64,000 nucleotides of DNA, taken from assembly GCF_031769215.1 (NCBI RefSeq), contig NW_026782116.1:1488001-1552000 (forward strand). The letters run 5' to 3'. Below the pieces are notes generated by a model. It had not been told where the DNA came from. It did not search any database and was given only the letters and a program-made list of their open reading frames with translations. Position numbers and translations under genes: made by a program. The DNA is from Ylistrum balloti (taxonomy: Eukaryota). This document shows, piece by piece, positions 6,020-38,035 of this stretch; the first letter of the stretch is position 1, and every line of letters begins with the position of its first letter.

Positions 6020-9000
6020 ATGGCAGCAAAAGAATGTGGCGAAGTTTTCATTTCCTATAGCAGCGTTGATATCACCCTGGTAAAGAACATACAAGACTGC
6101 TTAAAGAAAAATGGTAAGTTAATTAGTTATATTATTGTTGAAATATGCTTTGCTTAGTTAAAACACGAAGAAAAAAATTCCAACTGCCGAAATACAAACG
6201 GTGCTTTTATTTACTGCTCCGTGTAGCTAACTCCTTTATGAATAATTCATAAGTAACGTTAAATATTCCATTGAATAAATATTCTGGTGTCGGTTGGTGA
6301 CGAATATGAGACCTAAAGAGGCTATATGTTTGTTTATCACTCAGACTATGTAGACAAGAATCGCTTTGTGTTGCAAAATTAAATATATATATACATCTAA
6401 AGACGATTTCATAGACATATACACTCATTCACAATGTAACATTATCTTTTGACATATTGTAAATAGCTGATGATGATATAGTTTGGATGTGTGTGTGGGG
6501 GGGGGATAATAAAAAAAAATAAAGATTTTATTTTTAGAGCTTGTGACATTAATTAAACAAATGAATACGATATCACTATTGAGAAAGACCAAAAGATCTA
6601 CTCCTTGAGTAAGTAATATGAACAGTACCACGTTGATATCAATATGAGTTATCTTGTTTCCAGAAATCGATTGCGTTGTTGCCGATGATGTGAAAGCAGG
6701 AACTCACACACTAGATGTAATTGTACACTCCCTTTCAAGGAGTAAGGCATGTGTGTTTCTAGTGACCCCGGCTGCTTTGGAAAGTTCCTGGTTTGCTTTT
6801 GAAACTATCCTTACCTTAGAGAGATCGCACCAACGCGGTCAGCTGAATAGTGTGATCCTACTGCATAACGTAACTGAAGATGAGGTAACTTTTCCATAAA
6901 GTTGTATAAAAGATATACTAACGAATAACACATTTTAATACAAATTTAGAGTTAAGTGCCAAACAGAGTATTAAACTGCATCATACCATTGTTTTGCTCT
7001 TTTGAACTCGTCAGTGACGCTAAGCACATAAATTTTGAAGCCGACTGAACAAAACTCCAAAGAGATCGAAAGTAAAATCAAAATCAGGATTGGAAGATGC
7101 ACTAGCCATATAATTCACTACATTTCGTGTTTCATTTCTTTGATGTTTATAGGACAACGCCAAGTACACATGTATGTTCTGAACCGTGACATTATTCGAA
7201 TGAATTGAAACGTGACATGCAGGTTATATCAAACATCGGGGACTAAAAGTCTATGTTTACATTTATATGATCTTCTCACAGACAAATTTGTATTAAAAAT
7301 GAATTTCGTTTTTTAAATATCATTGAAAAGACAAAGAGAAAATATAAAGGCAAACCAGTAAGAAAACAGAAACAGAAAATTTTAAATCAGAATTTCTTAC
7401 TTTGAGATGTCCGAGCAGTGTATTTTTAAATAAATTTTGCTTTCAGCTTCCAAAGTTTGCCCTGTTTGACATGATTGATAAATATGAACTGGACCTGGAC
7501 GAGTTTGGACACTGGAATAATCAACAGATTAAACAGGTCATAAAGACAATCCAAGGTATCGAAGCTATTTAACTGCACGCTCGTGGCTGTAATTTTAATT
7601 CTGAACGTCGGCGTTATCTTGCATTTAATGTATTCAATTTTCTTGCTAAAACAACAACTTGAGTAGATTTCCATTTCCACGTTGTCAATATAAAATAGAA
7701 GAAATATACAGTGTCCTATTGTATAAAACAGTTTTTAACACTGCAATTGCAAATATAAGAAGTGCTTTTCAATTTCGAAAGATATTGTGAAGCATATTGT
7801 GGTGGCAATATGTATTCTTATAAATTCCAGAAGGGAAAAACATCGAATCTGAGTTACCGGTAGGGAATGTCGCCCATGCACAGGCCTGGTCTCATTATTT
7901 TGGATACCACCATATGATCCATCCACGTAGGTATTTTAATTGAATGACGTATTTATCATTTTATCGTTGCTAAAAACTCCGGAACATATACACTGTTTTA
8001 ATACGGCTGTCTCTAATAGAAAAACAAGTCTAGTTTATCAGGTTCCATTTCTTCTTTCAATAGCTGATTGAAAAGTAACAACCACAGCATACGTTGTTTC
8101 GTGTAGCTGAGGAATTGATAAGGTATAGATTGGAATCTTAATATAAGATCATAAAATTAACAAAATGTAAGAAATTTTAATTTTTAAAATATGCCATGGT
8201 TCTTTCAAGACATTTTGAATGTGTTTCTGTTGCGTTATGCGTTATATTTTATTGGTTTATAAGTCAGGCATGATTTCCCTTTTAAATTGTACGTCAAAAT
8301 GATTTGGTAGACATCTTTATAAATGATCGACGGATTGTAAGATAGAATTGATATGATACCTTTTTAACATTAATCTGATTCCCCTCCATTGGCATTTGAC
8401 ACCTCAGCTCAAATGGCTTTAACCAAATATTGCTTAACTGGTTACAATTTATAATTAACCAACCTTCTTTTACCACAAAAGCCATATGAGAAACTGAAAT
8501 TCAACGTTCGGACTTATACTATAGATCTTGCAGAGAAGATAAGAAGCTGTCCTTGGTATAGTAAAAACATGCCGATCGCAGTGTACGAACTGGTTCCCAA
8601 AGATTCCAATATACCGACATTCATAGAAGGACCGAACATAAAAAATATGGGATCACTTGGCGAAATCAAAGCGGAAGTAGCTGGCAACAAAAGAATATTC
8701 AGACTGAATGTGTACTGTATTGAAGATGGAGAAGAGGTACGAATAATACTTTAGGATTGGTAAATCTTAAAAAACTTTTCTGTGCAATACAAGTTCAGTT
8801 TGAATTGTCATGGTCTTGACTTAACTCTTTTGCTGTCGAGAGAACTACCTGCTAAGTTTTCATATATTCTTATTTTAGAATATGAGTTTGAACCTTTTTA
8901 AGTGAATAGCAGTCGTTGGATATAGCCACTTTTAAAAGCAGCATTTTCTTAAAACATTTTACCTTTTTTTTAAATTTTGTTCTTTTTATGTATTTAATTT

Positions 9001-9398
9001 TGAAAGAAATACTACTGCGTTGCACAGTATCCTAGTGTACTGGGTGCAATTTACAAGATGACCAAGTCTCCCATGATCGACCTGGACGAGCCGCACACAA
9101 TTCTGCAGGTTGCTCGATTTTACTATACTCTACAGTCCATACTCCAACACTCAAACGTTGAGGGATGCCGAAACCAGGCTAAACTCCTGTGGCTTGACGG
9201 TAATATATCAAGGAGATAAAGTAGCTTGTAGTAATGAAAATGAGCAGTGGAGAAAAAAGTTCACATTGTATCTGTTTTATATTATATAAGAATAAGATCA
9301 CATTTTAATTATTTAATTTTTTTGTTATTTCATCCATGCTTTCAGGCTCTGAAGCAGCAACGAGTGTACTGTTAAAGGCAGTTAAGAGAGATGTTAAG
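6020..9398 (+). CDS. STING1: TIR-STING unit 1: N-terminal TIR domain plus STING cyclic-dinucleotide-binding domain, no transmembrane region
   Basis: Phase-consistent exons: 6020-6113, 6664-6884, 7447-7555, 7831-7926, 8525 (or 8534)-8736, 9007-9199, 9346-9398. TIR motifs: EVFISYS, SKACVFLVTPAALESSWFAFET. STING motifs: LPVGNVAHAQAWSHYFGYHHMIHP (human STING [20 protein letters not shown]), YELVP, AGNKRIFRLNVY, YCVAQYPSV, QVARFYYTLQSIL. The last exon ends at a GT donor with no stop codon. Confidence 0.9.
6971..7250 (+). repeat. Dispersed repeat family A copy in STING intron 2
   Basis: Matches 33473-34030 at several anchors: ttaaactgcatcatac, actcgtcagtgacgctaag, aaattttgaa.cc, aacgc.aagtacacatgtat, ggactaaaagtc. 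Confidence 0.65.
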
Positions 9399-10880
9399 GT
9401 TTGCCCTATAATCTTTCTGATATTTTTGCTTAAAATTTATTTAGTTTTATCTTGCACTTCATCGCTTAAACGTAATATATTTCTGTGATAACACTGAGTG
9501 AGTTTTATCATGCACCCATGTAACTTACCCATCTTTTAGCACTGATACGGTTTAATTTCACAAATTACGTTTCGTTTGTTTTAATCTATTGCTCTATTTT
9601 TTATCATCTATACCCAAGTGTCGCCAACCTAAGTTTGTTTCCTCATATACTCTTTTAATGTATCATTTCAACTTTTATTGTACGATTTTACGTAACGAAA
9701 TGTGTACAAGCGAATTTTCAACCAATAAAAGGACTCCGAAAAATACGAACAATTTAACTCAGCTTGTATATCTTTGTTTTATTTATGCTACTGAGTTTGT
9801 AAAATTAGTTCAAAAAGAACAAATAGACAAGAAAACAGCTTTTCCAAGTCATTTGGATGAAGGTTTGTTCTAAAAGGTTTCAATGGACAAGTGTATCAAG
9901 TTAATCATATTCCTAACTCTCTTTTTGGCAGTATGAACAATGGAGAAGGCATTCAATTTTGTATCCCATTCCATTTGAGCAGGTCATTTTCAGTAGCAAA
10001 TATAATGATTCATTTTTCGCATAAGCTTCAACATTAACCAGTGGGACACTAACTTAATAGGTCACGCTTCCTTCATCTTAAATTTTTGTTATTTTAGCTT
10101 ATTAAAATATAAACTGCATTGATTGTTGGAGAAATTAACTAGCATAGAAAAATATAATTGGTTCTAACATAATGATTATTCAATTCAATAATATAAATAT
10201 CTATTTTAAATCGTAATTTCTATGATGTTATTTCAGTTGCTGAATATATAATCTCCAAGAAGACATTATACTTAGATAACTCCTCTCAAACCATGATAGC
10301 TGATATTGTTCGAGATGTTGAATCATCATGAGTAGTAAAAACTGTAACTTAGTTGTATTCGATTGTCTATGCTAAACTGCATATCCGTTTTGCAACCTAC
10401 TGTAGCTCTAGCATTATCATTACAAATGACACCTTACAAAATATATCAAACAACTGAACAACACACAAATATACCAAAACCAGACTATGCACGGGTGTTG
10501 TCACACAACGTGACGTCATCAGAATAATGACATTGCAACAATATATCTTTTTATGAATACACTAATGCGACATGGATTTTGGGAGTAGCATTAACTCCAA
10601 TACGTAGTTACTTTTGCACAATGGAGTATATAAAAAACACTGAAGATTTCCAAAATTACGGAGGTAAATTTTCCCCGGAATGTGTTATAAAACTATATAT
10701 ATGCTCGTTGTATACTATAATTTATTTTTCGTTTCCAAACGAATTCACGGGAACGCTGTAACTTTTGCTGTAAATCATCCATATGTCAGTTATGTTATAG
10801 ATTACATAAAAACATTTTCATCAAATTCAAGATGAATAAAAGAATAAAGTAAACATATAGATTGAAACATATTGATTAGA

Positions 10881-11110
10881 AAGTCCTGTTTGCCTTCGTG
10901 CAGTAAAAAGAATTCCTGTTTGGCTTCATATTTGAACAAGAAGCCATGTTTGGCTTCAGGCATGAACAAGAAGTCCTGCTTGGCTTCAGACATTAACAAG
11001 AAACTCTGTTTGGATCCATGCTTTGATAAGAAGTCATGTTGGCTTCATAAATTAAAAAAAACACTGTTTGGTTTCATACATTAAGAAAAAGATATGTCTG
11101 GCGTTATACA
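10881..11110. repeat. Degenerate 30-bp minisatellite, about 8 copies
   Basis: aagtcctgtttggcttc variants recur at 10881, 10911, 10941, 10971, 11001 and 11031. Confidence 0.85.
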
Positions 11111-11835
11111 TTAAAGAGGTAAAAACTCTATGGATGCAATATGTCATTGAGCACGGAATATAAATTCACCTAAATTAGAATCAATAACTTGCACAAATAA
11201 GAAATATTGAAAAAAATAAAGGAATTCAAAGTCATTTTAATGAAATGTTTACGTTATAGTTTATTTCCCATGGATCATTTGTTCAAAAGTTTTGCTGTTG
11301 CAAATAAGAAATTCTGATTAACAGATTTTCTACAAAATGACTCGCTTTCATTGTTTATTATACTACTTAGAACTATGTTTTGAGTGTTATTCACGGTGTC
11401 TTCAACACTGAAATAATAATGGTGGGTCTGATAAATATCTACAAATATCATTTGCGAGTGATGAACGAATAGATTATTGTTTTTGCCATCATATGTTGAT
11501 TTCTTTGCATCAACTCGTTTAGAGATAAACTATAATTATATATATGAAAACATTAGTTAAGTCATTTGATTCGATTGTTATATTGTTCTTTCAAAATAGA
11601 GGTGATATGATATGGTGTAACCCTTCATCTCCTGTTAAATTTTATATATGCTATGGATGTCAATAATGAAACACCATCAAATGTAGCGGTTGTCTAAATG
11701 AACATGTTGTACGGAGTGAAAGCAAGTCTCCGACTTTAAGATTAAGCTGTTCCTTTATATAATGTGCTTTTAATGAGTAATTAGATTTATTATCCAACTA
11801 TGTATATAACATATTCTACTGTATGCCATTTTCAG

Positions 11836-14800
11836 AGAACAGGGTTTCAAACTTTGGTTACGGATCTGCAAAAAGTCCTTCACACATTAGAAGATGGCCT
11901 ACCAAATAAGGAATACGAAGCGACTATCCTATACAACAGTGATGATGCAAAGTCCAATGAAATATGTGACCAAATTGAGAAACATCTTCTGAAGAAAAAT
12001 GTACGCCTTTTCCCGTCTCCGAATAAGCCAGGGACGAGACCATTTACAGGTAAATATTTAAATCCTGAAACAACAAGGAAGTACTAATATGGGAACATAA
12101 TCATAGTCCAAACTCAAATTCAATAAAACTAGGCTAAAATGTGAAATAAAGAGAAATTTATACAGTGACTCCTGAAAAAGTAAATGAAGAATAAGACTTA
12201 TCTTCAACGACACCTTATATGTAAATATTAGTTAATCCAAGTACACGATGTTCACAGATAAGAACAAGATATATAACAAATTAGTATGCGTTTATAATCT
12301 TTCATACCTTCCATATAGTATAATAAAGGATTTAACCTATTAAGAATATATATGCTTATAGCGATGGAAGAGGCGGCAGAAAAAGCACGATGGCTAATTC
12401 TGATCGTTACTCAAGACAGCCTCATCGACAACGATGTGTTTAAAATGCAGACGATGGCTTTGATAGCGAACAGCGTACACAGTAAGAAAGTGCGCGTCAT
12501 TCCAGTAACAGACAAGATATCTGCAGATGATATTTTACCAGACTTTTTGAAGTGGGTAACTTACATCGACATACAGACAACAGGATTTGAAAATCGTGTT
12601 TTAAAAGCACTGAGAGGTATATTGTGCTGTAGCTATTTTATCACCATTTCATTCGAGCAGTTTTTTTCTTATTAGTATTAATTTAACAGTAGAGAGGGTG
12701 ACCATTTGAAATTTTTTTTGATGACGCGTTTTTCAAGTATATCGGGGGAAAATTCATTTTTGACTAGAATCTGTTGGTCTGTCTCTACCGCGGTAACTGT
12801 TTTAAACTGACAATTTATAATATTGGTATTAATCTGTTAAAATTTTATATCGTCTTCATTTTCATATGAGTAATTGCTTGTAAAAAAAGTATCCGCATTG
12901 TGGCAAATGTCTTCGCTGTTTTATTTTTAAGGTGAAGACATCGAGCTGGCATTAGACGGGGGTCTCATCCCTGCTGGAAATGTTGGCTATGGCTTGGCCT
13001 GGGGTTATGTCACCAATTATCTGAAGGTTGTTCTTCCAAGTGAGTAATGTTTTCTACTGTATAGATGGTTATTTTCGTGGAGACGTTATTTTCGCTATTA
13101 CGTGAAAAAATAAGACATGTGTGTATTCAATGTATTTTTAAATTCAGATTGTGATTTGTTTATTTATTGAAATAGAATAGGCGTCTTAAACGCAAGTTGT
13201 CGCGAAAAGTTCGACTCGTGCAAAAACCAGCTAAACGGTATCTAAACCCGCTGATAAATTTCAGGGTATATATCACAAGGTATCTGACCAACAGATTTAT
13301 ATCAAGTTTTGGGTATAAATCATAAGGTTTCTGACCAACGGATCTATATTACGTTTAGGGTATAAAGCACAAGATTTCTGACCAACAGATGTATATTACG
13401 TTTAGGGTATAAACCACAAGGTTTCTGACCAACGGATATATGTCAAGTTTAGGGTATAAATCACAAGATAAGCGACCAACAGATATATGTCACGTTTAGG
13501 GTATAAATCACAAGGTTTCTGACCAACAGATATATATCAAGTTTAGGGTATAAATCATAAGGTTTCTGACCAACGGATCTATATTACGTTTAGGGTATAA
13601 ATCACAAGGTTTCTGACCAACAGATATATATCAAGTTTAGGGTATATATCACAAGGTATCTGACCAACAGATATATATCAAGTTCTGGGATTCATTTGGA
13701 ACATCTGTAGGTAGGATTTCTGTCTAAACAAAACATTGACATCACGTTCCATAGGGGAGGGGTTCAATTAACATGTCTCTATAAATTGACATTATCACGA
13801 ATTTATGAATAGGGATTTCTGTAATATTCAACGCAAAAGAGCAGCGTGATGATTTATCTCAATGTGTTTCTTTCAGAATTAGAACATTTACGGAATTTGT
13901 TAAAACAAAAAGCAGGCAACATGTGTATGTGCCCGAGCAAGCTATTTTTGTTGGTACCGAAAACATGTTACTGTCCAGGAAGGATCAAGAATGAGCATGT
14001 AACGCACGTGTATTCGAGTGAAGAGATAAGCGACTGTCAAGGTGGGGCAGACATCATAAAAGGTCTGGATATGTATAGCATTTCAAAGGAAGGAAACGTA
14101 AGAGAATAACATTGAATCCAATTCACTGTTTTTCCTTTCTTTCTTTTTCTTTTTTTATTTTGCTTAACTAAATTAAACACTATTAATGTAAAATGTGTTC
14201 TGTTTCTGGTATTTGTCTATTACTGATATTTAAATGTTTGTGCAAGAGACACACAAATCCGTCAGATATTTCAAGTACTGAATTAAGCTGCATTACACAG
14301 CTGGTTTGTTCTTCAAGAACTTATCAATGATTTACTAATACTAAATCAGGTCGCTGTATGAACAGAAATTTTTAACATATACCTGTATGTATAAAGCGGG
14401 TATTTGTATAATGTTCAAATATGTGGTTCTTTTTTATTATTATGTGCAATACAGAAACACATATTGTTAATTATCATGTTATCTGGCTAACAACATCTGC
14501 GTCGAGTTGGTAAGATCTTCCAACAGACTATTGGCATACCTATGAGAACCAACTGCGCCCCTCTGTTGGCTGATTTGTTTTTGTTTTCATACGAGGCTGA
14601 ATTCATTGAAGAGCTTTTCAAAACAGGTTACACAGACCTTGCTAAATCGTTTAATTTCACCTTCAAGAAATTTATTGACTTCGTCCATCGTAAATATCCA
14701 CCAGAACTGGAAATCAAAGACATGGCAGACTCTTCAACACCAGCTGCTTATCTCAATCTTTTCAAATTATCAAATTTTCAAATTATCGTCAACTGACGGG

Positions 14801-15908
14801 GTTCAAATGATGCAGGTTTAGGAAAATTATGGGAAAGTTTTATGGTCGCCATTATGATCTCACTGAGAAATATTTCATTTCTGTTTGACATGAAACTGGA
14901 CGTATTTGATACTCGTGAGTTTTCCTGTTGGTTCGGTTGTTATATACCTTGCTCTCATTAGAGAATATGACATAACTTATTTGCATTGAAGAAGGTTTAC
15001 ATGCTTACTACTCCGGAACACCTGATCTTATTCGTCTCCGTGTAAATAATTCTTTAGTTCATATTTTGCCCTTATTCCGCCCTAGTTTTGTTTAATGTGA
15101 GTTTGAATTATGATTATGTTGCCATGTTGCTATTTTCTTGATGATTATTTTTATAGATATACAATTTCTTTGGACAATATCCTGCACCGTTACGCTGTCT
15201 TCATGCGATGAACGATTGCATGATAGCTGGGATCAATCCAGAATCTATGGCAAGGGAATGTGAACGATTCTGTGATACCCTTCTAGATCTCCTGCATGGC
15301 CCAATAGGTGGTGGTCTTCAAAGCAAATGCGAACTTGTCTTCTTTGATGGTAAACACTTTTACTTTTCTGTCTGTAATTACGTGAAAAAACCCCACCAGA
15401 ATTACTCCCCTTGTCAAGTAAATTTTCAATTCAATTCAAAATTAATATGACGGGGAACCACTAGAATTAAAATACGGCAAATGCACATGAAAAGTCAGAT
15501 TCTTTGCAGTAAAAAGTTTTTCTACTTATTCGACAGAATTTTACATAGCAACCCTTGTCAAGCCAATCATCTAATGACATGTTATAGCCAATTTAACGAG
15601 CATCACAATGACCTTCCGACACATAAGAATCAGTATCTCGCCCTTAGGATTAAATAATTCCCCAATATAGTCCTAATGACGAGCATAAACCATTAAAAGA
15701 TATTTTATTTACCTGGTTATCACAAAACCATGTATCAGTTTGTATTAAAGAACTTCTTAACCTTTTAGACGAAGTCTCCAACGACCTGCAAATGCAGTTG
15801 CTGCCAAGGTTGTCTAATCAGGTCGATCCCAAAGAGACAAAGCTGAAACGGAAATCTGGACATGACGATAGGAAAGATGAACTGAAGCAAGCTAAGATGA
15901 TGAACTGA
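11836..15908 (+). CDS. STING1: TIR-STING unit 2: divergent TIR plus divergent STING domain; probably the C-terminal half of the same gene as unit 1
   Basis: Phase-consistent exons: 11836-12049, 12362-12616, 12932-13039, 13877-14097, 15157-15349, 15769-15908 (TGA). TIR motifs: YEATILYN, ARWLILIVT, VRVIPV, LPDFLKWVTYIDI. STING motifs: PAGNVGYGLAWGYVTNYLKVVLP, KLFLLVP, FFGQYPAPL, ECERFCDTLLDLL. The first exon begins at a phase-0 acceptor with no Met. Confidence 0.88.
13259..13690. repeat. 47-bp minisatellite, about 9 copies, in a STING intron
   Basis: Unit tttagggtataaatcacaaggtttctgaccaacagatatatatcaag. ctgacc recurs at 13284 and 13331. Confidence 0.95.
14497..15055 (+). mobile_element. Degraded Penelope-like retroelement fragment (RT core plus 3' end) in a STING intron
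   Basis: Translation IGIPMRTNCAPLLADLFLFSYEAEFI...YPPELEIKD...AAYL matches the GIPMGTNCAPLLADLFLYSYE motif of PLE-type RTs. It is internally deleted and frameshifted. Confidence 0.7.
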
Positions 15909-16327: not shown

Positions 16328-17859
16328 TATACTAAAAGGATAAAGAAACGCAGGGTGAACTTTAAACCAGAAATTAAGTATGATATCGGGCTTCATTTAA
16401 AACGAAATTTTGAATACTTACAGATAAATTAAAGCTTAAAAATTTCCAAAGTCTGTATTTTGCATCTGAAAATTGGTTTAGAGGTACTAACGATTAAATT
16501 GAATGGACCCATAGGATTTTGAAATTGAAATTGAACTGAGTCATCAATATCTTGCGTGTCCGCCGTTTGCTGTGGTCACGGCCCTTATTCTTCTGGTCAA
16601 AGTGTTCATGAGAGCGTTAATCCGTCTTATGGGGATGTTGTCCCACTCTTCAATCAGAGTTCTGGTCAACTGCTCTCGAGTAGCAGGGGGTGGCTGGCGC
16701 TTTCGAACCTGTCTATCCAACTGGTCCCAAAGACGCTCGATCGGGGACAAATCAGGGCTATATGGCGGCCAATCTAGTGGTTGAATGTTGTTGTTGGCCA
16801 GAAAGACTTGGCAAATCCTTGCTACGTGGGGCCTAGCATTATCCTGCTGGAGGGTTAGATTATGCTGCTGTAAGAAAGGGATAACGTGGGGTCGAAGGAT
16901 CTCATCTCTATACTTAGCTGCTGTTAAATTGCCATCAATAACAACCAATTGTGATTTTAACCCGTGTGAGATTCCTCCCCACACCATTACTGAAACGCCC
17001 CCAAGCCTATCCCTCTCTACAACGAAAGCGTCCGTAAAACGTTCGCCACGACGAAGGTAGACACGTTGACGGCCGTCAGATCGATAAAGACAGAATCGAG
17101 ACTCGTCCGTGAAGAAAACTTGTCTCCACTGCCTCAGTGGAAACCGTCGTGGAGCATGTGCAGCGACCCAGGCCATACGACGCTGACGTCGAGCAGGGGT
17201 AAGGTGTGGACCTACGAAGGGCGACGTGCTCTTACACCAACTTCTCGTAATCGATTCCTTACAGTTTTTGAACTTATAGGACGCCCATGATTTCCACGAA
17301 CATAAATGCACTCTCAACGGCAGTAAGGCGCCGATTACGCACATGAGAGACGACGATATAGCGATCCTGACGTCGTGACGTTACGCGCGGACGTCCTGAC
17401 CTAGGTCGATCGGCCAATCGCCCAGTTTCCCGAAGACGTCTTACATGACGTTCTATGGTGGAAACATTAACACCAAAGTGCCTAGCAACCTGATTTTGCA
17501 GCTGTCCTTGCATCAGCATCTGAATGGCCTGACCCCTCTGAACTTCTGTGAGTCGTGCCATTCTTAAAACGAATCAAATTCTTAATTAATTTTAGGGAAG
17601 CAGTTAGTCTGTATAAAGACTAACGAAGAGTGACTTGACCAACGCTGCATGAGACCAGAACAACACGACGCACGAAATTCTTGTTTTTTCCTTCCTCCAT
17701 TTACCAGAGCTGCGCACTGTACCGTGACTAAATTTTCGATACATGACAAAGTGTAATATGACCTAATTACTCAATCCACAAAGTTTCACTTTATTTAGAG
17801 AACGCGTTTTAAAATATCGGAATAAATATTACCCTGCGTTTCTTTATCCTTTCAGTATA
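16328..17859 (-). mobile_element. Full-length Tc1-family DNA transposon (~1.53 kb), inactive
   Basis: 29-bp TIRs at 16328-16356 (TATACTAAAAGGATAAAGAAACGCAGGGT) and 17831-17859, with one mismatch. TA flanks on both sides. Contains a transposase gene. Confidence 0.93.
16544..17561 (-). pseudogene. Tc1 transposase (DD34E) with two single-base frameshifts
   Basis: N-terminal HTH with GRPR, then FTDESRF, VMVWGGI, QQDNARPH and SPDLSPIE, with 34 residues between the second D and the E. The frame breaks near 17300 and 17215; the middle segment VRGNHGRPISSKTVRNRLREVGVRARRP is in a third frame. Confidence 0.92.
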
Positions 17860-19699: not shown

Positions 19700-20516
19700 G
19701 AGATCTCAGTACGAAGATCCATGGTAAATAATACCATTAAAGATCCCCGTGACACACGAGCGATCTCGGTATACAGATCAATACTAGATAGTACAACTAA
19801 AGAGTCCCTGTGACACACGAGCGATCTCGGTATTAAGATCAATACTAGATAGTACAACTAAAGAGTCCCTGTGACACACAAGTGATCTCGGTATAAAGAT
19901 CAATAATTGATAGCACCACTTAAAGATTCCCTGTGACACACAAGTGATCTCGGTATAAAGATCAATAATTGATAGCACCACTTAAAGAGTCCCTGTGACA
20001 CACGAGCGATCTCGGTATTAAGATCAATACTAGATAGTACAACTAAAGAGTCCCTGATAGTACAACTAAAGAGTCCCTGTGACACACAAGTGATCTCTGT
20101 ATTAAGATCAATACTAGATAGTACAACTAAAGAGTCCCTGTGACACACGAGCGATCTCGGTATTAAGATCAATACTAGATAGTACAACTAAAGAGTCCCT
20201 GTGACACACGAGCGATCTCGGTATTAAGATCAATACTAGATAGTACAACTAAAGAGTCCCTGTGACACACGAGCGATCTCGGTATTAAGATCAATACTAG
20301 ATAGTACAACTAAAGAGTCCCTGTGACACACAAGTGATCTCTGTATTAAGATCAATACTAGATAGTACAACTAAAGAGTCCCTGTGACACACAAGTGATC
20401 TCGGTATTAAGATCAATACTAGATAGTACAACTAAAGAGTCCCTGTGACACACAAGTGATCTCGGTATTAAGATCAATACTAGATAGTACAAATTAATAG
20501 TCCATGTGACACACGA
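19700..20516. repeat. 61-bp minisatellite, about 13 copies, with one partial unit near 20040
   Basis: Unit ctcggtattaagatcaatactagatagtacaactaaagagtccctgtgacacacgagcgat. ctcggt recurs at 19765 and 19826. Confidence 0.95.
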
Positions 20517-20541
20517 GTGATGCTCCAGGTATGTTTTTCAG

Positions 20542-21533
20542 GAATAAATGGTGACAACTACAACTACGACACCAACAACACCAACAACTTCAACACCAGC
20601 AACTACGATAACAACAACAATTTCAGCAACAACAACTACGACAACAACACCAACAACTACGACAACAACACCAACAACAACAACACCAACAACTACGACA
20701 ACAACACCAACAACTACAACACCAACAACTACGACAACAACACCAACAACTACGACAACAACACCAACAACTACAACACCAACAACTACGACAACAACAC
20801 CAACAACTATGACAACAACACCAACAACTACAATACCAACAACTACGACAACAACACCAGCAACAACTACAACAATACAGTCTGCAACTGCGCAACAACC
20901 AAGAAAGAAACGACCTGGTACAAGGAAGGACTTCAATGGAAATAACAAAGGTATCTCCGATTTGTGCTTACATACAGAAAGATGGTCCGTTATATCATAT
21001 GGATTATCTACGGGTATGGCCTTCACACTCACGCGGTTTTCTTCCCTTTAATGAAACCGTTCTGTATCATTATCAGCATCGAATTTTTTTTTTTTTTTTT
21101 TTGTTCGGGGAATATTTCAATGATATAAACACCATAAATTGGGTTGTTGTAGATTTCAGTATAACACAAATATGTGGACTAATCAGTAAAAGGAAGTCCA
21201 ACGATGTTTTAATGGCATTTCCATGTCACATGTCACGACTTCATATTTGACAATTTGAACAATTTAAGCATATATTGGTTATATTGACTCTACAATTCAA
21301 ACAAAAAAATGTTGTATGGTTGAAGTTTATTTTATGTTGTCTATCATGACAATAGATGTGGCAGGTACGCACTCCATAACAACGTCATTCAACCGAACCA
21401 TGCCAATATCACTACATAAATATTTCAGGGGTATCAGTTTCAGCGATAGCCGTTGCAATATCATGGTGTTCGTTGCTGTGGTTGTAGTGGTTGTTTCTGT
21501 AATTGTATACATGAAGATACGAAAAAATAAAAG
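20542..21533 (+). other. Candidate exons of a Thr-rich (mucin-stalk) single-pass membrane protein, possibly a pseudogene
   Basis: ACA-rich block at 20548-20880 reads TTTTTP repeats, with a phase-1 donor at 20917. A hydrophobic segment VFVAVVVVVVSVIVY followed by basic MKIRKNK ends at donor AG|gtatgc (21533). No upstream exons were found. Confidence 0.35.
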
Positions 21534-30890: not shown

Positions 30891-33472
30891 TCCAAATGAT
30901 AAACAATAGGAGTCAAAATTACTATATATTCACTACCTGTCGTTATCTTTACAGTTCAACACTGCTGCTTCCGCGGTTTGTAACATTTAAATATAAAATG
31001 CTTTGGTATTCGTACATTATATGTACCAATGGTGATATTCTTTCTATTAAATAAACACTTACTTTAATACTAAACAAAAACTTCAAGGACGCAACAATAT
31101 AATGTGTCCTTGTACGACTGTTTTCCGCTGACTTGTAAATGAGACTACTAAATGATAGTGGTACGGACAGGATATCATATTTCGCTCGGTTGACTACAAG
31201 GAATAAAAGCAAAGTATGATATCCTAATGGATTGCCCCCCAATATGTAGCGCACCTGTTTTGGCACGAGGTGCACGTGTAGCTGGTGACAGAGCAACTAA
31301 GTTCCGAGCAATGTACTGGTCTAGGACGGTCGATTTTTTTCTGACATTATATATTTATATATTGTATGATATACCAGTATTATTTATAGGAATGTGAGAA
31401 TAGTTATACATTATTTTAAAGGACCATCAGCCTTATCGACCAGTCTAACAAAGGATTTTCATTATATATAAATACACGTACTGGTATCACTTGAACAGTC
31501 TATGGGGGTTTTGTTGTTTTACCATAGGGTGGGAAATTGGAGAAATACGGTAGGATATCAGGTTTGGATGCGTGATGTGACGCCTACGGCTCTAAATGTG
31601 TGTTTCCAACACAGTACCTGACACGTGCTTTATTGGTTTTGTACAACAACGTTTAATATATCACATGTCGTGCATTCAATTCCGTCAACTAAGTTGAATC
31701 GTATATGCAAATACAGAATGCAATACAATTGATTTATTCTGACAAATACAGTAACATTGTATATTTATTTTGAAAAAGCACGACATGTTAAAATCAATAT
31801 AACTCAAAAAATAAGTCTTTGCTTGCGCAGTTTTTGAAATGTGAAAGCATAAAAGCATGTGGCGATTTACGAACGACAGTTAATACCTGAACCTATTATG
31901 CCCAAGAAGTAGCAAATAGGAAAATGATAAGTAGCAATAAATCCACCTAAAAAACAAATAGAAGCAGAAAAATTACAAATACGATGACGAACACCGATGT
32001 AGGACTCCTTTATCATGCTATTTAAGATTATGTTGTAAATGTACTAGCAATCCATCTTTCAAGAAAACCTTTCGGAAGAAATAAGTAAACACCACAGGAG
32101 GAGAAAGGAGGAAATGTACAATCGGTGATAGAAAGTTTACAATATAAGATAATCGAAATCGTCAAAGATATTATTCTCCTTAGTGGGGTAAGTCGTCCCA
32201 GTTTGTCACGTTGGGACATCATCGTCGAGGTCTGTGGCGTTCTGTTGATTTAATTCTGGTAATCGCAAAACTGCAACTTTATTGTGATATGATTAAGGAA
32301 GTGATTTCAATCGAAAATTGTGAAAACGACATACAGAAGAAAAGAATTATGTAAAGATAGCAATTAATTTTAAAATAATTTACGCTTGCAATTTTTATGT
32401 TACATTCACAAAGGACAACACAATATTCATCTGGCGTGTTTTCATTTCATTGACACGATTTATAGGAATATTTATCTTCAAAGATTAAAATATATTTAAC
32501 TACATGCGAAATCATTTTGTATTGCGGTATTAAAAAGACCGGGGGATGATGATGCGGGGTATGCATCCGCCCCGACATATATGAAACATTTCACGCGGGA
32601 CCACTTCTACTTCACTTCTAGATCAAATAAAAACGCCTGCCATTATTTCACACATATATGAATATGTTAAGATCTTTTAACACATTTTAGAAATGAACGT
32701 TTAATTGAAAATAATCCCTTAATATGACGCCCCCTAAAAAATTTAATTATAAGGTATTGTATGAGGAATTTATAGCTTAATTACAGTCATATGTTTTTGA
32801 ACGTTACATAATCACGTTGAGGAAAAATGACGAGTTAAATCATTTCAACACTGTTTTCACGATTTGTCCGGGTGCCTTCGTCATCAAGACTTTTGACTTC
32901 TGTACATCCATGAACAATCTCGAGAATAAAACGACAAATTTTAACGTTACCCAGTAAATCTACAAGCAGACTATATATATATATAGATGAGCATTTTCTG
33001 TCCTAGTGGTTCATTTGCATACAACATTTGTTGGTGGTCTGCACAAAGACAGACTCCGTCTCCCCATCCCCTCTGTATCTGTCCCTGAGAAACGATAAAC
33101 TGAACAAGCAAACACCAACACTCTGTCTAGACCATTGAAACAGGAGAATATGTGATCACAAAGCGCAAAACCAATTTCTTCTTAATGCCTTGAGTGTTGA
33201 TTTGGAGTTGTTAATAATGTTTTAAGCTGAGGGGTATATTTTCACATTATGAGTTAACTTCGGTCAACAATACAATAACGGAACTACGGACTTTTCTTTC
33301 TATGTAATCTACCACGAAATAGACACCTGTCTCATTATTGTGGTGTCTGTTATTCTCTATGTTAGAAAGCAGTATGATAAAGAGCCTAGCTGATAGATGG
33401 TATATATATATATATATATATATGCACCTTTCTATCAAAATTTAGAATTTGATCGATAGAGTCAAATGATAA

Positions 33473-34030
33473 TTAAACTGCATCATACAGCTGTTTCGTT
33501 CTTCAAAGACTCGTCAGTGATGCTACATCATACAGCTGTTTCGTTCTTCAAAGACTCGTCAGTGACGCTACATCATACAGCTGTTTCGTTCTTCAAAGAC
33601 TCGTCAGTGATGCTACATCATACAGCTGTTTCGTTCTTCAAAGGTTCGTCAGTGACGCTACATCATACAGCTGTTTCGTTCTTCAAAGACTCGTCAGTGA
33701 CGCTACATCATACAGCTGTTTCGTTCTTCAAAGACTCGTCAGTGATGCTACATCATACAGCTGTTTCGTTCTTCAAAGACTCGTCAGTGATGCTACATCA
33801 TACAGCTATTTCGTTCTTCAAAGACTCGTCAGTGATGCTAAGGGCTAAAATTTTGAAACCTTGGAGACAACCGAGGAAAATCAAAATTGATAGATAAAAA
33901 GATCAAATTTTAGATGTAGAAATGTAGTAGTCTGGTGAGCTCATTATCATCAGTTTCGTCATATAATTTCAATAGAACGCTAAGTACACATGTATTATAT
34001 TAAGTAAAACATCATGTATGGACTAAAAAG
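33473..34030 (+). repeat. Family A element containing an internal 45-bp tandem array (8 copies, 33481-33840)
   Basis: Unit catcatacagctgtttcgttcttcaaagactcgtcagtgatgcta. Its flanks match the single-unit copy at 6971-7250. Confidence 0.85.
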
Positions 34031-34631
34031 TCCTCCAGCTGTGTCTACCGAAGATTGTACAAGAAGCACACAAATTAATAATAACTTTCAATTCAAATTA
34101 AACATTTAATACAGAATAAGCACAAAAAATTAATCGAACTGCATCATATGCACATTTTTACCCAAAGGTCAAAAATTGCATATCTCCATAGCAACTTACT
34201 TCTAGTGGCAGTTTGACAGGTATTCATATCGAAACAACACTTTATCTGCAGTGAATATTTTGACGACTTTTATGACAAACCTATTTTGATAAAGTTGTGT
34301 TTATCATTCAGTCAGCGATGATGGTAATTGATTTGGCATCAATTATTCAAAGGTAATCAGGTTACATCAGGTGATTTCCAGTACGGCGGCATAGTATTGA
34401 ATAAGTGCTTCCTGTAGGTTCAGATTCAAGACTACACACTGAAGGAAGCAATCGACAGTTATGGCGTTACTACAATCGAAGTGTGATTACGATGTCGGGA
34501 AAGTTAGGGAAATGAATTGCTGATTGAATAACTATTAAAACATAAAAATCAATATAAAACGTATTGATATCTAGAAAGGATATGTATTTGTGTGGTTATT
34601 GTGTCGTGTGGTGAGGATTAACACATATACC

Positions 34632-35696
34632 ATGAACGTTTCGGGCAATTCCAGTTCCTCAATCTTGACTAACAGAACGGAACATAACAATGGTTTTGAT
34701 TTTGACGTTTTTCTCTTTGCCATGTATGGAGTTCTACTTCCGGTCATCGTGGCTTTCGGGTACATTGGAAACATATTGACAGCTATAGTGCTATGGAAAA
34801 AGGAAATGGCGTCCGCGAATAACATCCTTCTACGTGCCCTGGTTTTGAGCGACATGACTATGATAACAAATCTGTTCATGTTTTTATCTCTACCAGTACT
34901 GTTTTCTAGATTACTGGATTACGACCTTGTTATAAATGTGATATATAACCAAGGGTTCCCAATCATTAATTACCTAGGTATGACTTCACAGCAATGTAAT
35001 GAGTATGTTCTTGTAGCCATCTCTGTGGAGCGCTACATCGCCGTCTGTCAGCCACTCAAGTACGCCCATTATAAAAGTAAACGAAAGACCATCATTCTCG
35101 TGTGTGGGATTATCACTTTTTCTTTCCTTTACAACATTCCTCGTCTGTTTGCATCAACAGTCCGACCCACTACATGCATGAACGTAAATTCCTCTTTAAC
35201 ATGTTATGAAAATCTTAGTACAAAATTCGGGGAAAGCTATTTCTACCAGGAAGTGTATTCAGTATGGATGTATGGTGCCGCATATTTTGTGTTTCCTCTC
35301 GTTGTGCTGTTTATAATGAATATTTTTATTCTAAAAGAACTGACAAAGATGAGGAGAATACGTCAGAACCTTGGTGTTATCAATTCACCAAACGCAAAGA
35401 AAGACAGCATTTCTCTTAGTCTAGTCATCATCATGACAGTGTTCGGCGTCGTCCAAACTCTAGGCTTTTTCAATCAGTTTTTGACCAATGCGTCAGGTCC
35501 ATCTATCTTCAGAGAAACTGTCAATACTTTGTATGGAATCAATTCTAGCGTTAATATTTTGATTTATGTTGTTGTAGGGAAGAAATTTAGAAGGAACGTC
35601 TCCGACCTTTTCAAGACGTGTTTGTTTTGTTCTGCGTTTCGTAAACATTCATCTGAACATTATCAAGTGTCAGAACTTGTCAGGGTTAGAATTTGA
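34632..35696 (+). CDS. Intronless class A (rhodopsin-like) GPCR, peptide-receptor-like (FMRFamide-receptor-like group), 354 aa
   Basis: Seven hydrophobic segments, with GYIGNILT (TM1), LVLSD (TM2), ISVERY (TM3), YNIPRLF (TM4) and NSSVNILIY..VGKKFRR (TM7/helix 8). The N-terminus has N-glycosylation sequons. MNVS is taken as the start. Confidence 0.93.
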   Translation: MNVSGNSSSSILTNRTEHNNGFDFDVFLFAMYGVLLPVIVAFGYIGNILTAIVLWKKEMASANNILLRALVLSDMTMITNLFMFLSLPVLFSRLLDYDLVINVIYNQGFPIINYLGMTSQQCNEYVLVAISVERYIAVCQPLKYAHYKSKRKTIILVCGIITFSFLYNIPRLFASTVRPTTCMNVNSSLTCYENLSTKFGESYFYQEVYSVWMYGAAYFVFPLVVLFIMNIFILKELTKMRRIRQNLGVINSPNAKKDSISLSLVIIMTVFGVVQTLGFFNQFLTNASGPSIFRETVNTLYGINSSVNILIYVVVGKKFRRNVSDLFKTCLFCSAFRKHSSEHYQVSELVRVRI

Positions 35697-38035
35697 AAAC
35701 GATTTTCGTTGAATTCCAAACTCATTTTGTTTGTATTATTCACCAAAATAGCCACGTGTTTATTTGTAACACAACGGAATTCCTTTCATGTAAATGTTCA
35801 CACGATCACATCATCATACGTTTAATTAAAAAATGCGGTTTTACCAACCTGATATTGTGAGTTTCATTTCATTTCAAAACCCAACAAAATGATTTTATAG
35901 GATTGAACAGAATTGTTTTTCAGTGATAAGTAATGACAATTATCTAACACGTGATCAGGTGTCAATCGGAGGTTACCAGCAATAAATGATTTACGGTAAT
36001 TTACTATCATGTCAATAATTCATTATTATGACTATGTTGTGGCTAGGAACGATATTGTAACGAGTTCCATCTATTCTAACTTTCTATGTTAAATTTGTTT
36101 TTTCAAAAATTGATAGAAAAGAAATAAAGCTATTGCAGTTTAGTCTACCTGTATTGACCAAATTAAGTGCATATACTTAATAAATTAATTATACTATTGC
36201 ACATGCATATGGTTCTATGGGGATTTGAACAGCTTAGGGCAGTTGATATACATTTCATGGGAATGGGAAGAGCTTAGAAATTTATACACTAGTGTAGCTA
36301 GATAGTAACTGTTTTCGATCACCTTTGGAATTTCCTCCTATGCTTCAAGATTTATATTCTTATCATAACTGACCATTCCTTAAAGGACGAAACACCTGTT
36401 TCATACGGTTTAATTCATTATTTGACTTAACTCTTAACTTAACATCAAACTCTAAATTGTATTAAAGATAGTATTGACATTTTGTCTTTTATACAACTTT
36501 TAATAGTGTTTTATAGTCGGTGAACAATTTTTAAAAAGTGTATGCTAAGAATATCATTATTTCTTAATGATGAAAAATGAGGGAAAATATATGTTGCAGC
36601 TTTACATAGAACATGTTCAATTCCCTTTCTTTTATCTGCCTGAAATAACGATTATATAAACACTTCAAACGATAATTCTTCAGCTTCAATAGCACAAAAA
36701 AAGTACTCAGATTCATTTTTAAAGCATTTTGGACGGAGGAGAAAATCGCACTATCATATAATGTGAATAACCAATAGTGCAGGGTTTTATCTTAGGCCGA
36801 GGATGTGTTCTATGAAATGATATAACTTATTTCGTGTGATGAGCTGTTGTGAAATAAACATAATCGTTCATCCATTCAAAATATTTGAACTACACGTCAT
36901 TAACAAAACAGTAATATATCTCACGAGATTGTACAGAAGTTTACAGGGATATTGTGGATACCATTAAAACAATTGCTCGGTGTCCCTGTAGAGTTTCAAT
37001 AGCGCTGTGGTTGTTATGTTGGTAGGAATGACTTATGTGGCCATCAACCTTCCTAGTGTCTTCCGATAGTTCATTTACCACTTTGGGAATATTCGCCGGC
37101 AATAGAGATTACAATCCAATATATAACATTCTTTAATGTATTGATGACAATAATCCTCATGCGTTACTGACAGAGGTCTGATATTAATTCTGCTCAGTTG
37201 GTACACAATTTGTAAGGATAGACAAAACACATGATACATATAAATCCCTTCACAAGTGAATATTTAGACATGTAGGAATAAGGTTACAGATTTCGATAAT
37301 GGACAAAAAACAGTTCATTTATGTCTAGAAATTCGACAAAGTCAATACTTCAATATATACCTATAGAGAAATATTTCGACAAATTAAGAATAGAAAACTG
37401 GTGCTATAGTTGTGTCATACATTCACAATAGATCAGAAGGATATATACACATATTAATGTAGTGTCTGAACGAATCAGTATATCAAATTTCCCCTTCCTA
37501 CAGAAAAAGTATTCATTCACAAATGCAAGACCATATATGTGTGCTATGTCTCCTTTATAATAAAGCATTTAAGTTCGCGAGCCAAAATTGTACAATTTAC
37601 ATGTATAGAACTATATATGTAAAAAAAATCATTTGTTAACATTGGAACTAGTGTTAATCACAGGGACCAAACCAACTAAGGCTAGCACAAGCACGGAATT
37701 GAAATATTCAAACGAAATAACATATTCGTAAATCATTGGCATTATTTTTTTTATTGGAAAACGATACATGCCATTTTCATTAAAATAATGATTACATATT
37801 TCAATCATCTTGGCACAAGTCATCAACCTGTCACCACGAAGGCACAGGACGACATATCATCTGCTTTTAAAACTGGATGCGCAGTGAATATGTCGTCAGA
37901 ACACTGAAGTTCGTTGATGAGACAACGCCAAATAATAGGGATAATAAGAGAGTCAATGGGACACAAACCTGTAATTATCTAAAGCGCAATGTGTCATTTC
38001 CCCCGTGGATTGCCGGAGTAGTAGACATCGTTACC

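What the first reader, a model, noticed from the sequence alone, without database searches (positions are those of the whole stretch)
6781..12470. One apparently catalytic TIR paired with one apparently dead TIR
Seen: TIR1 has SSWFAFET, with Glu at codon 6801-6803. The equivalent helix in TIR2 reads DVFKMQT, with Gln at 12448-12450. Known: enzymatic TIRs (SARM1, plant NLRs, bacterial TIR-STING) need this alphaC Glu for NAD+ cleavage, and the active site forms between adjacent TIRs. Inferred: TIR1 may be an NADase or signal-producing TIR, and TIR2 a scaffold that completes or restrains it. The Glu alone does not prove activity.
Basis: partly seen in the sequence, partly recalled or inferred. 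Interest (0 to 1): 0.75.

Follow-up and report, generated by a model that had tools for sequence, protein, structure and literature searches.

The report
Scallop doubled TIR-STING, unequal TIRs
A scallop immune gene encodes two TIR-STING units in one chain; the first TIR keeps a glutamate that NAD-cleaving TIRs need and the second has lost it, but the same glutamate occurs in non-enzymatic Toll-like receptors, so enzyme activity is unproven.

Summary
The window comes from the scallop Ylistrum balloti. It carries a 13-exon gene on the + strand (6020-15908; NCBI LOC132549838, "uncharacterized") for a soluble TIR1-STING1-TIR2-STING2 protein.

- **The two codons.** GAA at 6801-6803 is Glu78, inside an intact WxxxE motif in TIR1 helix alphaC. 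CAG at 12448-12450 is Gln in the same column of TIR2, which has lost both the Trp and the Glu.
- **Family pattern.** The asymmetry holds across bivalve doubled TIR-STINGs. TIR1 has Glu in 13 of 14 distinct sequences. The TIR2 column holds nine different residues and differs among all four paralogues of this genome (CAG, GAG, AAG, CTT).
- **TIR2.** It is almost certainly non-catalytic. It resembles MyD88, TRAM and MAL, and MyD88 and TRAM carry Gln at this column.
- **TIR1.** "Apparently catalytic" is not established. After the oyster TIR-STING, its nearest relatives are TLR1, TLR2 and TLR6, which keep the same Glu. No SARM1 chain was among the 60 matches listed.

I favour scaffold-type signalling (about 0.55) over an NADase TIR1 (about 0.25). 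The doubled architecture is already recorded in oysters, so this is a new member of a known kind.

The parts
6020..15908 (+). Whole gene: TIR1-STING1-TIR2-STING2, 13 exons, 702 aa in the all-canonical model (667 aa in the database model P0001, NCBI LOC132549838 of Ylistrum balloti)
   Evidence: Pfam on the four parts: TIR_2 52.2 bits, STING_LBD 58 bits, TIR_2 31.1 bits, STING_LBD 57.2 bits.
6020..6113 (+). TIR1 exon 1 (start codon, strand betaA EVFISYS, helix alphaA)
6664..6884 (+). TIR1 exon 2 (BB loop, alphaB, betaC, alphaC with WxxxE, betaD)
   Evidence: Best PDB hit is 6WT6, E 1.4e-7.
6789..6791 (+). Trp74 codon TGG, the W of WxxxE in TIR1
   Evidence: The motif is described for AbTir W204/E208 and SARM1 W638 in 10.1101/2022.05.07.491051.
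6801..6803 (+). Glu78 codon GAA, the alphaC glutamate of TIR1
   Evidence: It is one of four positions conserved in at least 90% of sequences in the TIR1 alignment.
7447..7555 (+). TIR1 exon 3 (C-terminal part of TIR1)
7831..7926 (+). 96-base in-frame exon absent from the database protein. It encodes STING1 helix alpha1 (LPVGNVAHAQAWSHYFGY).
   Evidence: tblastn with homologue P0004, 74% identity; splice sites
8525..9398 (+). STING1 exons 8525-8736 and 9007-9199, plus linker exon 9346-9398
11836..12049 (+). TIR2 exon A (linker helix, betaA YEATILY, alphaA, betaB, BB loop)
12362..12616 (+). TIR2 exon B (alphaB, betaC, alphaC lacking W and E, betaD, WVTYI motif)
12448..12450 (+). Gln codon CAG (Gln395 of P0001, Gln427 of the 702-aa model), the TIR2 residue in the catalytic-Glu column
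12932..15908 (+). STING2 exons 12932-13039, 13877-14097 and 15157-15349, plus the tail exon 15769-15908 ending in the stop codon

Best explanation
The gene encodes a soluble member of the bivalve doubled TIR-STING family, with no transmembrane segment. An old internal duplication of a TIR-STING unit was followed by division of labour between the two TIRs.

TIR1 stayed receptor-like. It keeps the WxxxE motif of helix alphaC (Trp74, Glu78), as do the oyster TIR-STING and vertebrate TLR1, TLR2 and TLR6. TIR2 became adaptor-like. It is closest to MyD88, TRAM and MAL, and has Val and Gln where TIR1 has Trp and Glu.

Inferred mechanism:
- STING1 and STING2 pair within one chain, as two oyster TIR-STING chains pair in 6WT6. 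This brings TIR1 next to TIR2.
- Cyclic-dinucleotide binding and oligomerisation then let the TIRs seed a cooperative scaffold assembly that recruits downstream TIR adaptors and the TBK1-IRF axis.
- In this reading Glu78 is conserved as part of a TLR-type surface or fold, not as a catalytic residue.

Shown here: the architecture, the residue states, their conservation pattern, and the nearest relatives. Inferred: the intramolecular pairing, the scaffold output, and the absence of catalysis in TIR1.
For: - **Architecture and family.** Pfam finds four domains. Twelve representatives of 586-748 aa share the TIR-STING-TIR-STING order. Named members come from Mytilus, Saccostrea, Tegillarca, Mizuhopecten, Potamilus and Mya. 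Pecten maximus contributes a 482-aa partial relative.
- **No membrane anchor.** The best 19-residue hydropathy window scores only 1.17.
- **TIR1 relatives.** The profile finds 6WT6 at 1e-21, then TLR6, TLR15/TLR2, TLR1, TLR2 and TLR10, then MyD88. No SARM1 chain was among the 60 listed. Glu aligns to Glu in TLR6, TLR1 and the TLR15/TLR2 chain.
- **TIR2 relatives.** The profile finds 6WT6 at 1e-10, then TRAM, MyD88 and MAL. The best fold match is the MyD88 assembly 7BEQ at 24% identity.
- **Site census.** TIR1 has Glu in 13 of 14 distinct sequences. TIR2 has Q, E, K, N, H, S, T, W or F. In three of this genome's four paralogues the codons differ only at the first base (CAG, GAG, AAG), and the fourth is CTT. 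The TIR1 Glu codon changes only synonymously, GAA or GAG.
- **Function in a relative.** Knock-down of oyster TIR-STING lowers TBK1 induction, IRF8 nuclear entry and the interferon-like protein (PMC8218723).
- **Glu is not sufficient.** A conserved Glu does not guarantee activity: TirB and TirD are inactive (PMC13142454).
Against: - Glu78 is one of only four positions conserved in at least 90% of TIR1 sequences. The full WxxxE motif of proven NADases is intact in 11 of 14 TIR1s. Such strong constraint would also fit catalysis.
- One preprint lists the oyster TIR-STING among TIR domains with NADase activity, with the Glu in a proper pocket (10.1101/2022.05.07.491051).
- Foldseek scores TIR1 about as well against SARM1, AbTir, RPP1 and bacterial TIR-STING (TM 0.69-0.77) as against TLR6 and MyD88.
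- AbTir is an active NADase that assembles in a MyD88-like scaffold arrangement. A scaffold-like appearance therefore does not exclude catalysis.
- No expression data exist for this gene.
- No interaction or activity was measured.
Confidence: 0.55

Rival explanations
1. TIR1 is a cyclic-dinucleotide-activated NADase or signal-producing TIR. Glu78 and Trp74 form the catalytic pocket. The non-catalytic TIR2, held alongside by the STING1-STING2 pair, supplies the neighbouring BB loop that completes the site, or holds TIR1 in check until ligand binds.
For: - The WxxxE motif is intact, and Glu78 is conserved in at least 90% of TIR1 sequences.
- The motif residues are the ones that contact the NAD+ mimic in AbTir (W204, E208) and SARM1 (W638), and active sites span two TIRs through the BE interface.
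- The oyster TIR-STING is listed as an NADase TIR in one preprint.
- The TIR2 BB-loop Gly is conserved across the family.
- TIR1 gives a sub-threshold hit to the CAP12/Pycsar TIR family: 19.3 bits against a cut-off of 24.7.
Against: - TIR1's nearest relatives with known function are TLR1, TLR2, TLR6 and TLR10, which keep the same Glu. No SARM1 chain was among the 60 matches listed.
- A later study says the role of the oyster TIR domain remains unclear (PMC10327000).
- The primary oyster paper (PMC7572726) could not be read.
- One subclade has lost the Trp (Saccostrea, Tegillarca), and Mizuhopecten has lost both Trp and Glu, while keeping the architecture.
- The TIR1-TIR2 complex prediction gave no answer.
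Confidence: 0.25
2. TIR2 is a decaying remnant of the duplication with no function of its own. The Glu/Gln difference only reflects neutral drift in a dispensable domain.
For: - The catalytic-site column of TIR2 holds nine different residues, mostly one base change apart.
- TIR2 is more divergent overall: mean column identity 33% against 40% for TIR1.
Against: - TIR2 has been retained in every family member across bivalve orders.
- It has its own invariant and near-invariant residues: Trp at the start of betaC, the IPV proline, and the WVTYI motif.
- It folds confidently as a TIR, with pLDDT 81.7.
- It contains no stops or frameshifts.
Confidence: 0.1
3. Annotation artefact. Two neighbouring single-unit TIR-STING genes have been wrongly joined, so the two TIRs never share a chain.
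For: - No RNA run is available for this species.
- The database model of a neighbouring cluster (P0002, 1,422 aa) does seem to fuse two genes.
Against: - The linker exon 9346-9398 joins STING1 to TIR2 in frame, with canonical splice sites and no stop or start codon between them.
- Relatives of 685-742 aa lie as single ORFs on contigs of 2.3-3.7 kb. The one inspected, P0023, is an uninterrupted ORF on a 2,339-base contig.
- Twelve diverse representatives share the same order of domains.
Confidence: 0.03

Closest known systems
Crassostrea gigas TIR-STING (PDB 6WT6 apo, 6WT7 with 2',3'-cGAMP)
   Same: It is the best sequence match of both TIRs (profile E 1e-21 and 1e-10) and the best fold match of TIR1. 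It has a TIR fused N-terminally to a STING ligand-binding domain. Its alphaC Glu aligns with Glu78.
   Different: The oyster protein has one unit and works as a homodimer of identical chains, so its two TIRs are identical. Here two diverged units sit in one chain and the TIRs are unequal.
[quoted passage not shown]
   Same: The domain order is the same and alignment runs the full length. The window protein is a member.
   Different: Those reports describe the architecture only. The conserved Glu in TIR1 against a free-running column in TIR2 is not mentioned in the papers I could read. Some members differ: Mytilus TIR2 has Glu, and Mizuhopecten TIR1 has Gln.
Bacterial TIR-STING (Sphingobacterium faecium SfSTING), a c-di-GMP-activated NADase filament
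   Same: It has the same TIR-then-STING order, a catalytic Glu in alphaC, and activation by oligomerisation (PMC9402430; PMC13142454).
   Different: Eukaryotic TIR-STINGs are reported to be a convergent fusion using an animal-type TIR (PMC10327000). The match to the CAP12/Pycsar TIR family is below threshold. The bacterial protein has one unit per chain.
TLR1, TLR2, TLR6 and TLR10 receptor TIRs, and MyD88, TRAM and MAL adaptor TIRs (scaffold assemblies)
   Same: TIR1 matches the receptor TIRs and shares their SxWxxxE helix. TIR2 matches the adaptors, and MyD88 and TRAM share its Gln.
   Different: In vertebrates the receptor and adaptor TIRs are on separate proteins, driven by an extracellular LRR domain. 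Here both are fused in one chain to cytosolic STING domains.
SARM1 TIR (NADase; Glu642, Trp638)
   Same: It has the WxxxE motif and the TIR fold, with TM about 0.75.
   Different: No SARM1 chain was among the 60 listed sequence matches of the TIR1 profile. SARM1 sits in a mainly bacterial TIR clade, apart from the TLR and MyD88 TIRs (PMC13142454).
Plant RPS4/RRS1 TIR pair (from my own knowledge, not checked here)
   Same: A TIR with the catalytic Glu works together with a partner TIR that lacks it and restrains it. The heterodimer 4C6T appears among TIR2's fold matches at rank 29.
   Different: These are two separate NLR proteins from plants. There is no STING domain and no sequence relationship beyond the TIR fold.

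Membership tests
Metazoan TIR-STING fusion (oyster type), doubled form | TIR domain directly N-terminal to a STING ligand-binding domain, present twice in one chain | tested here: met
   Pfam scores are all above cut-off: TIR_2 52.2 and 31.1 bits, STING_LBD 58 and 57.2 bits. The order is confirmed by the full-length alignment.
Metazoan TIR-STING fusion (oyster type), doubled form | No transmembrane domain, unlike vertebrate STING | tested here: met
   The maximum 19-residue Kyte-Doolittle mean is 1.17. This is a simple hydropathy scan, not a dedicated predictor.
Metazoan TIR-STING fusion (oyster type), doubled form | Closest solved relative is the C. gigas TIR-STING | tested here: met
   6WT6 is the top hit for both TIR profiles and for the TIR1 model.
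Metazoan TIR-STING fusion (oyster type), doubled form | Binds a cyclic dinucleotide | not testable with these tools
   Not examined here. The ligand pockets are the subject of other notes on this window (s1-237000, s1-237013).
Enzymatic (NADase) TIR domains | Catalytic Glu in helix alphaC | tested here: met
   Met for TIR1 (Glu78). Not met for TIR2, which has Gln.
Enzymatic (NADase) TIR domains | Aromatic residue, usually Trp, four residues before the Glu (WxxxE) | tested here: met
   Met for TIR1 (Trp74). TIR2 has Val at this position. The motif is defined.
Enzymatic (NADase) TIR domains | Closest characterised relatives are proven NADases | tested here: not met
   After the oyster protein, the best TIR1 matches are TLR6, TLR15/TLR2, TLR1, TLR2 and TLR10, then MyD88. 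Bacterial and plant NADase TIRs come later, and no SARM1 chain was among the 60 listed.
Enzymatic (NADase) TIR domains | NAD+ cleavage that depends on the Glu and on TIR self-association | not testable with these tools
   This needs a biochemical assay.
Scaffold TIR domains (TLR and adaptor type) | Sequence membership in the animal TLR, IL-1R and adaptor group | tested here: met
   Pfam PF01582 scores 26.1 bits for TIR1, above the 21.3 cut-off. TIR2 reaches only the general TIR_2 model.
Scaffold TIR domains (TLR and adaptor type) | BB-loop Pro-Gly used for TIR-TIR contacts | tested here: inconclusive
   TIR1 has Ala-Gly (VKAGTH), although the oyster protein and P0023 have Pro-Gly. TIR2 has Pro-Gly (NKPGTR). 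Only the Gly is conserved across the family.
Scaffold TIR domains (TLR and adaptor type) | Forms parallel two-stranded assemblies and recruits adaptors, without catalysis | not testable with these tools
   The TIR1 plus TIR2 complex prediction returned no answer.

The most novel reading that the evidence does not exclude
TIR1 is a true NADase whose active site is completed in cis by the BB loop of the permanently non-catalytic TIR2. One chain would then carry a built-in, asymmetric enzyme-plus-helper TIR pair under the control of a single-chain STING pseudo-dimer. This would be an animal STING that signals by NAD+ cleavage, as bacterial TIR-STING does, but arrived at independently.
Probability: 0.18. 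Interest if true: 0.8.

Novelty: new member of a known kind. Interest (0 to 1): 0.4.

Why it matters
The role of the TIR domain in animal TIR-STING proteins is still described as unclear (PMC10327000).

The doubled bivalve proteins offer a natural experiment. After duplication, one TIR kept the WxxxE Glu under strong constraint while the other let it drift. This genome even holds a sister gene whose TIR2 has Glu again.

That gives ready-made wild-type and variant pairs for asking what the Glu is for. It could serve catalysis, as in bacteria, plants and SARM1, or a TLR-like contact.

If it is catalysis, STING-controlled NAD+ cleavage would exist in animals as well as in bacteria. If it is not, the case is a clean warning that the Glu alone does not mark an enzyme.

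Tried and rejected
- **TIR1 plus TIR2 complex prediction.** Verdict "no answer" (score 0.01, mark 0.34). This is not evidence either way.
- **RNA evidence for the gene.** No RNA run holds the stretch. Splicing rests on canonical sites and on homologues.
- **Primary oyster paper.** Morehouse et al. 2020 (PMC7572726) and the published version of Manik et al. 2022 (PMC13025242) are not held. Whether the oyster TIR-STING cleaves NAD+ therefore rests on two conflicting secondary statements. My recollection that no activity was seen is unverified and was not used as evidence.
- **Fold search as a discriminator.** TIR1 matches enzyme and scaffold TIRs about equally, so the fold does not decide.
- **Exact rebuild of the database protein from canonical splice sites.** It failed at one STING2 junction. 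This was resolved by using the canonical acceptor, which adds three residues.
- **Register shift giving TIR2 a Glu.** Rejected, because there is no Glu in or next to helix alphaC of TIR2.
- **Residue-level structural superposition on SARM1 or SfSTING.** This could not be done. The tools return aligned ranges, not residue pairs. The equivalence to the catalytic Glu rests on the WxxxE motif and on sequence-profile alignments.
- **Literature searches for the doubled architecture.** These gave nothing useful. A later search found the oyster report.


Full report
**What the sequence is**

The window is eukaryotic: 31-42% G+C in 2-kb windows, mostly about 33%, with short exons. It lies on contig C259 of a 648-Mb assembly.

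Stop-to-stop fragments on the + strand between 5.9 and 16 kb hit TIR and STING ligand-binding models in the order TIR, STING, TIR, STING. A search of 1.84 billion representative proteins with the second TIR2 exon returned a 667-aa protein that is 100% identical (P0001). The source names it "uncharacterized protein LOC132549838 [Ylistrum balloti]", a scallop protein.

I rebuilt the gene from canonical GT-AG sites. It has 13 exons from 6020 to 15908 and encodes 702 aa. The database model differs from this in two ways:
- It skips a 96-base in-frame exon (7831-7926) that encodes STING1 helix alpha1. Homologue P0004 matches this exon at 74% identity.
- It lacks three residues at one STING2 junction.

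Pfam on the four parts gives TIR_2 52.2 bits, STING_LBD 58, TIR_2 31.1 and STING_LBD 57.2, all above cut-off. There is no hydrophobic stretch long enough for a membrane span.

**The observation**

GAA at 6801-6803 encodes the Glu of SSWFAFET. CAG at 12448-12450 encodes the Gln of DVFKMQT. Three checks show that the two residues occupy the same structural position.
- HMMER aligns the TIR1 Glu to the Glu of SEWSKFEM in the oyster TIR-STING 6WT6 and to the Glu of SEWCHYEL in TLR6 and TLR1. The TIR2 profile column that holds the window's Gln aligns to that same oyster Glu, and to Gln in TRAM (WCNFQF) and MyD88 (CDFQTK).
- Profile HMMs built from either TIR align both TIRs of every family member in this one column.
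- AlphaFold2 models of the two domains (pLDDT 86.4 and 81.7) place both residues five residues after the first residue of helix alphaC.

TIR1 has the full WxxxE motif (Trp74, Glu78). These are the residues that contact the NAD+ mimic in AbTir (W204, E208), and the Trp corresponds to SARM1 W638 (10.1101/2022.05.07.491051). TIR2 has Val and Gln instead. There is no Glu anywhere in its alphaC stretch, so no shift of register can supply one.

**One chain, not two genes**

The linker exon 9346-9398 joins STING1 to TIR2 in frame, with no stop or start between them. Relatives of 685-742 aa lie as single ORFs on contigs of 2.3-3.7 kb. I inspected one of them, P0023, which is 50% identical. Its ORF runs without interruption over bases 23-2251 of a 2,339-base contig, so it is transcript-like.

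No RNA run exists for this species in the index. Expression of this particular gene is therefore not shown.

**The family**

Twelve diverse representatives (clusters at 50% identity) share the TIR1-STING1-TIR2-STING2 order. Named members come from these species:
- Mytilus edulis and M. coruscus (annotated MITA or TMEM173)
- Saccostrea
- Tegillarca
- Mizuhopecten
- Potamilus
- Mya ("STING-like protein")

Pecten maximus contributes a 482-aa partial relative. The named members are all bivalves, from several orders.

[quoted passage not shown] The architecture is therefore known.

This genome has three more copies in tandem on contig C685. It also has STING-domain matches on two other contigs.

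**The asymmetry is a family trait**

In the TIR1 alignment only four positions are conserved in 90% or more of the sequences, and Glu78 is one of them. The census of the column is:
- **TIR1:** Glu in 13 of 14 distinct sequences. The exception is Mizuhopecten, with Gln. The Trp is kept in 11 of 14.
- **TIR2:** nine different residues, namely Q, E, K, N, H, S, T, W and F.

The four paralogues of this genome read as follows in TIR2:

| Copy | TIR2 codon | Residue |
|---|---|---|
| Window gene | CAG | Gln |
| C685 copy a | GAG | Glu |
| C685 copy b | AAG | Lys |
| C685 copy c | CTT | Leu |

In all four, TIR1 keeps Glu through synonymous GAA/GAG changes.

On a maximum-likelihood tree the window protein pairs with P0023 (both Gln). 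That pair is sister to copy a (Glu), with support of 100/100 for the trio.

The TIR2 column therefore drifts freely while the TIR1 column is held. TIR2 as a whole is not decaying. It has its own conserved Trp, the IPV proline and the WVTYI motif, and it folds confidently.

**What the TIRs resemble**

The TIR1 profile finds the oyster TIR-STING first (1e-21). Next come TLR6, TLR15/TLR2, TLR1, TLR2 and TLR10 (1e-18 to 1e-10), then MyD88. Bacterial and plant NADase TIRs come later, and no SARM1 chain was among the 60 matches listed.

The TIR2 profile finds the oyster protein (1e-10), then TRAM, MyD88 and MAL. Its best fold match is the MyD88 higher-order assembly 7BEQ.

Foldseek on the TIR1 model ranks 6WT6 first. 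It then mixes SARM1, RPP1, bacterial TIR-STING and AbTir with TLR6, TRAM and MyD88 at similar TM-scores. Fold alone does not separate enzyme from scaffold.

**Interpretation**

TIR2 lacking catalysis is well supported. Every proven TIR NADase needs this Glu (PMC8295901; PMC8635717). [quoted passage not shown]

TIR1 being catalytic is not established, for these reasons:
- The same Glu sits in TLR1, TLR6 and the chain filed as TLR15/TLR2. To my knowledge these act as scaffolds with no reported NADase activity, but I could not find a citable test in the library.
- Amoeba TirB and TirD keep the Glu and are inactive on NAD+ (PMC13142454).
- For the oyster TIR-STING the secondary literature conflicts. 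One preprint lists it among NADase TIRs with the Glu in a proper pocket. Another says the role of its TIR remains unclear. The primary paper is not held.
- Functional work in oyster points to a STING-TBK1-IRF axis (PMC8218723).

I therefore favour the following reading at about 0.55. This is a receptor-like TIR1 and an adaptor-like TIR2, brought together by a STING1-STING2 pair within one chain, that seed a scaffold assembly.

AbTir also shows that an enzyme can use a MyD88-like assembly.

The proposal that TIR2 completes or restrains TIR1 could not be tested. The complex prediction gave no answer.

**Novelty**

This is a new, previously uncharacterised member of a known kind. The conserved-versus-drifting Glu column is not mentioned in the papers I could read. 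It is a useful handle for experiments, but modest as a discovery. I score interest at 0.4.

Noticed in passing
window 7831-7926 (+): A 96-base in-frame exon with canonical splice sites encodes STING1 helix alpha1 (ELPVGNVAHAQAWSHYFGYHHMIHP). It is missing from the database protein P0001, although all full-length homologues have this helix. It is either a cassette exon or an annotation miss.
   Followed up: partly
window 14097 / 15157 (+): The STING2 junction in the database protein cannot be made with GT-AG sites. The canonical acceptor at 15155-15156 adds Ile-Tyr-Asn, which fits the homologues better (P0023 has VHNFIGQY).
   Followed up: partly
G000 contig C685, about 1,227,400-1,271,800 (loci L014, L015, L016): Three further TIR-STING-TIR-STING genes lie in tandem. 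The database protein P0002 (1,422 aa) appears to fuse the first two into one model.
   Followed up: partly
L014:7053-7055: The closest paralogue in this genome has GAG (Glu) in the TIR2 column where the window gene has CAG (Gln). It still lacks the Trp four residues upstream (VFQMET).
   Followed up: yes
P0019 / P0028 (Mizuhopecten yessoensis LOC110447478): This family member has Gln instead of Glu in TIR1 as well, so neither of its TIRs carries the Glu.
   Followed up: no
P0017 residues about 725-745: One family member, from a transcript-like contig of unnamed origin, ends in a strongly hydrophobic stretch (hydropathy 2.24). This looks like a C-terminal membrane anchor, which the window protein lacks.
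   Followed up: no
window 16544-17344 (-): A 266-aa ORF with a DDE_3 transposase domain (67.8 bits) lies in a G+C-richer patch just downstream of the gene. It is Tc1/mariner-like by eye.
   Followed up: partly
window 14491-14793 (+): An ORF inside a STING2 intron resembles a retroelement reverse-transcriptase fragment by eye (GIPMRTNCAPLLADLFL). It gave no Pfam hit.
   Followed up: partly
window 34590-35696 and 37877-39118 (+): Two intronless paralogous ORFs (368 and 413 aa) belong to the rhodopsin-family GPCRs (7tm_1, 80.5 and 85.1 bits).
   Followed up: partly
window 39032-41892, 33466-33897 and 20484-21050: Long tandem repeats are open in several frames: a LIKYSKSAAGLP-type unit over about 2.8 kb, an HHTAVSFFKDSSV unit, and an Asn/Thr-rich microsatellite-like tract. 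These are probably satellites rather than genes.
   Followed up: no
G000 contig C642 (loci L002, L004): L004 carries a TIR piece of the oyster type (SLQSQWCKYEMLAAIDD, Glu present) followed by a STING helix-alpha1 piece. A STING-domain match lies about 15 kb away on the same contig (L002).
   Followed up: no
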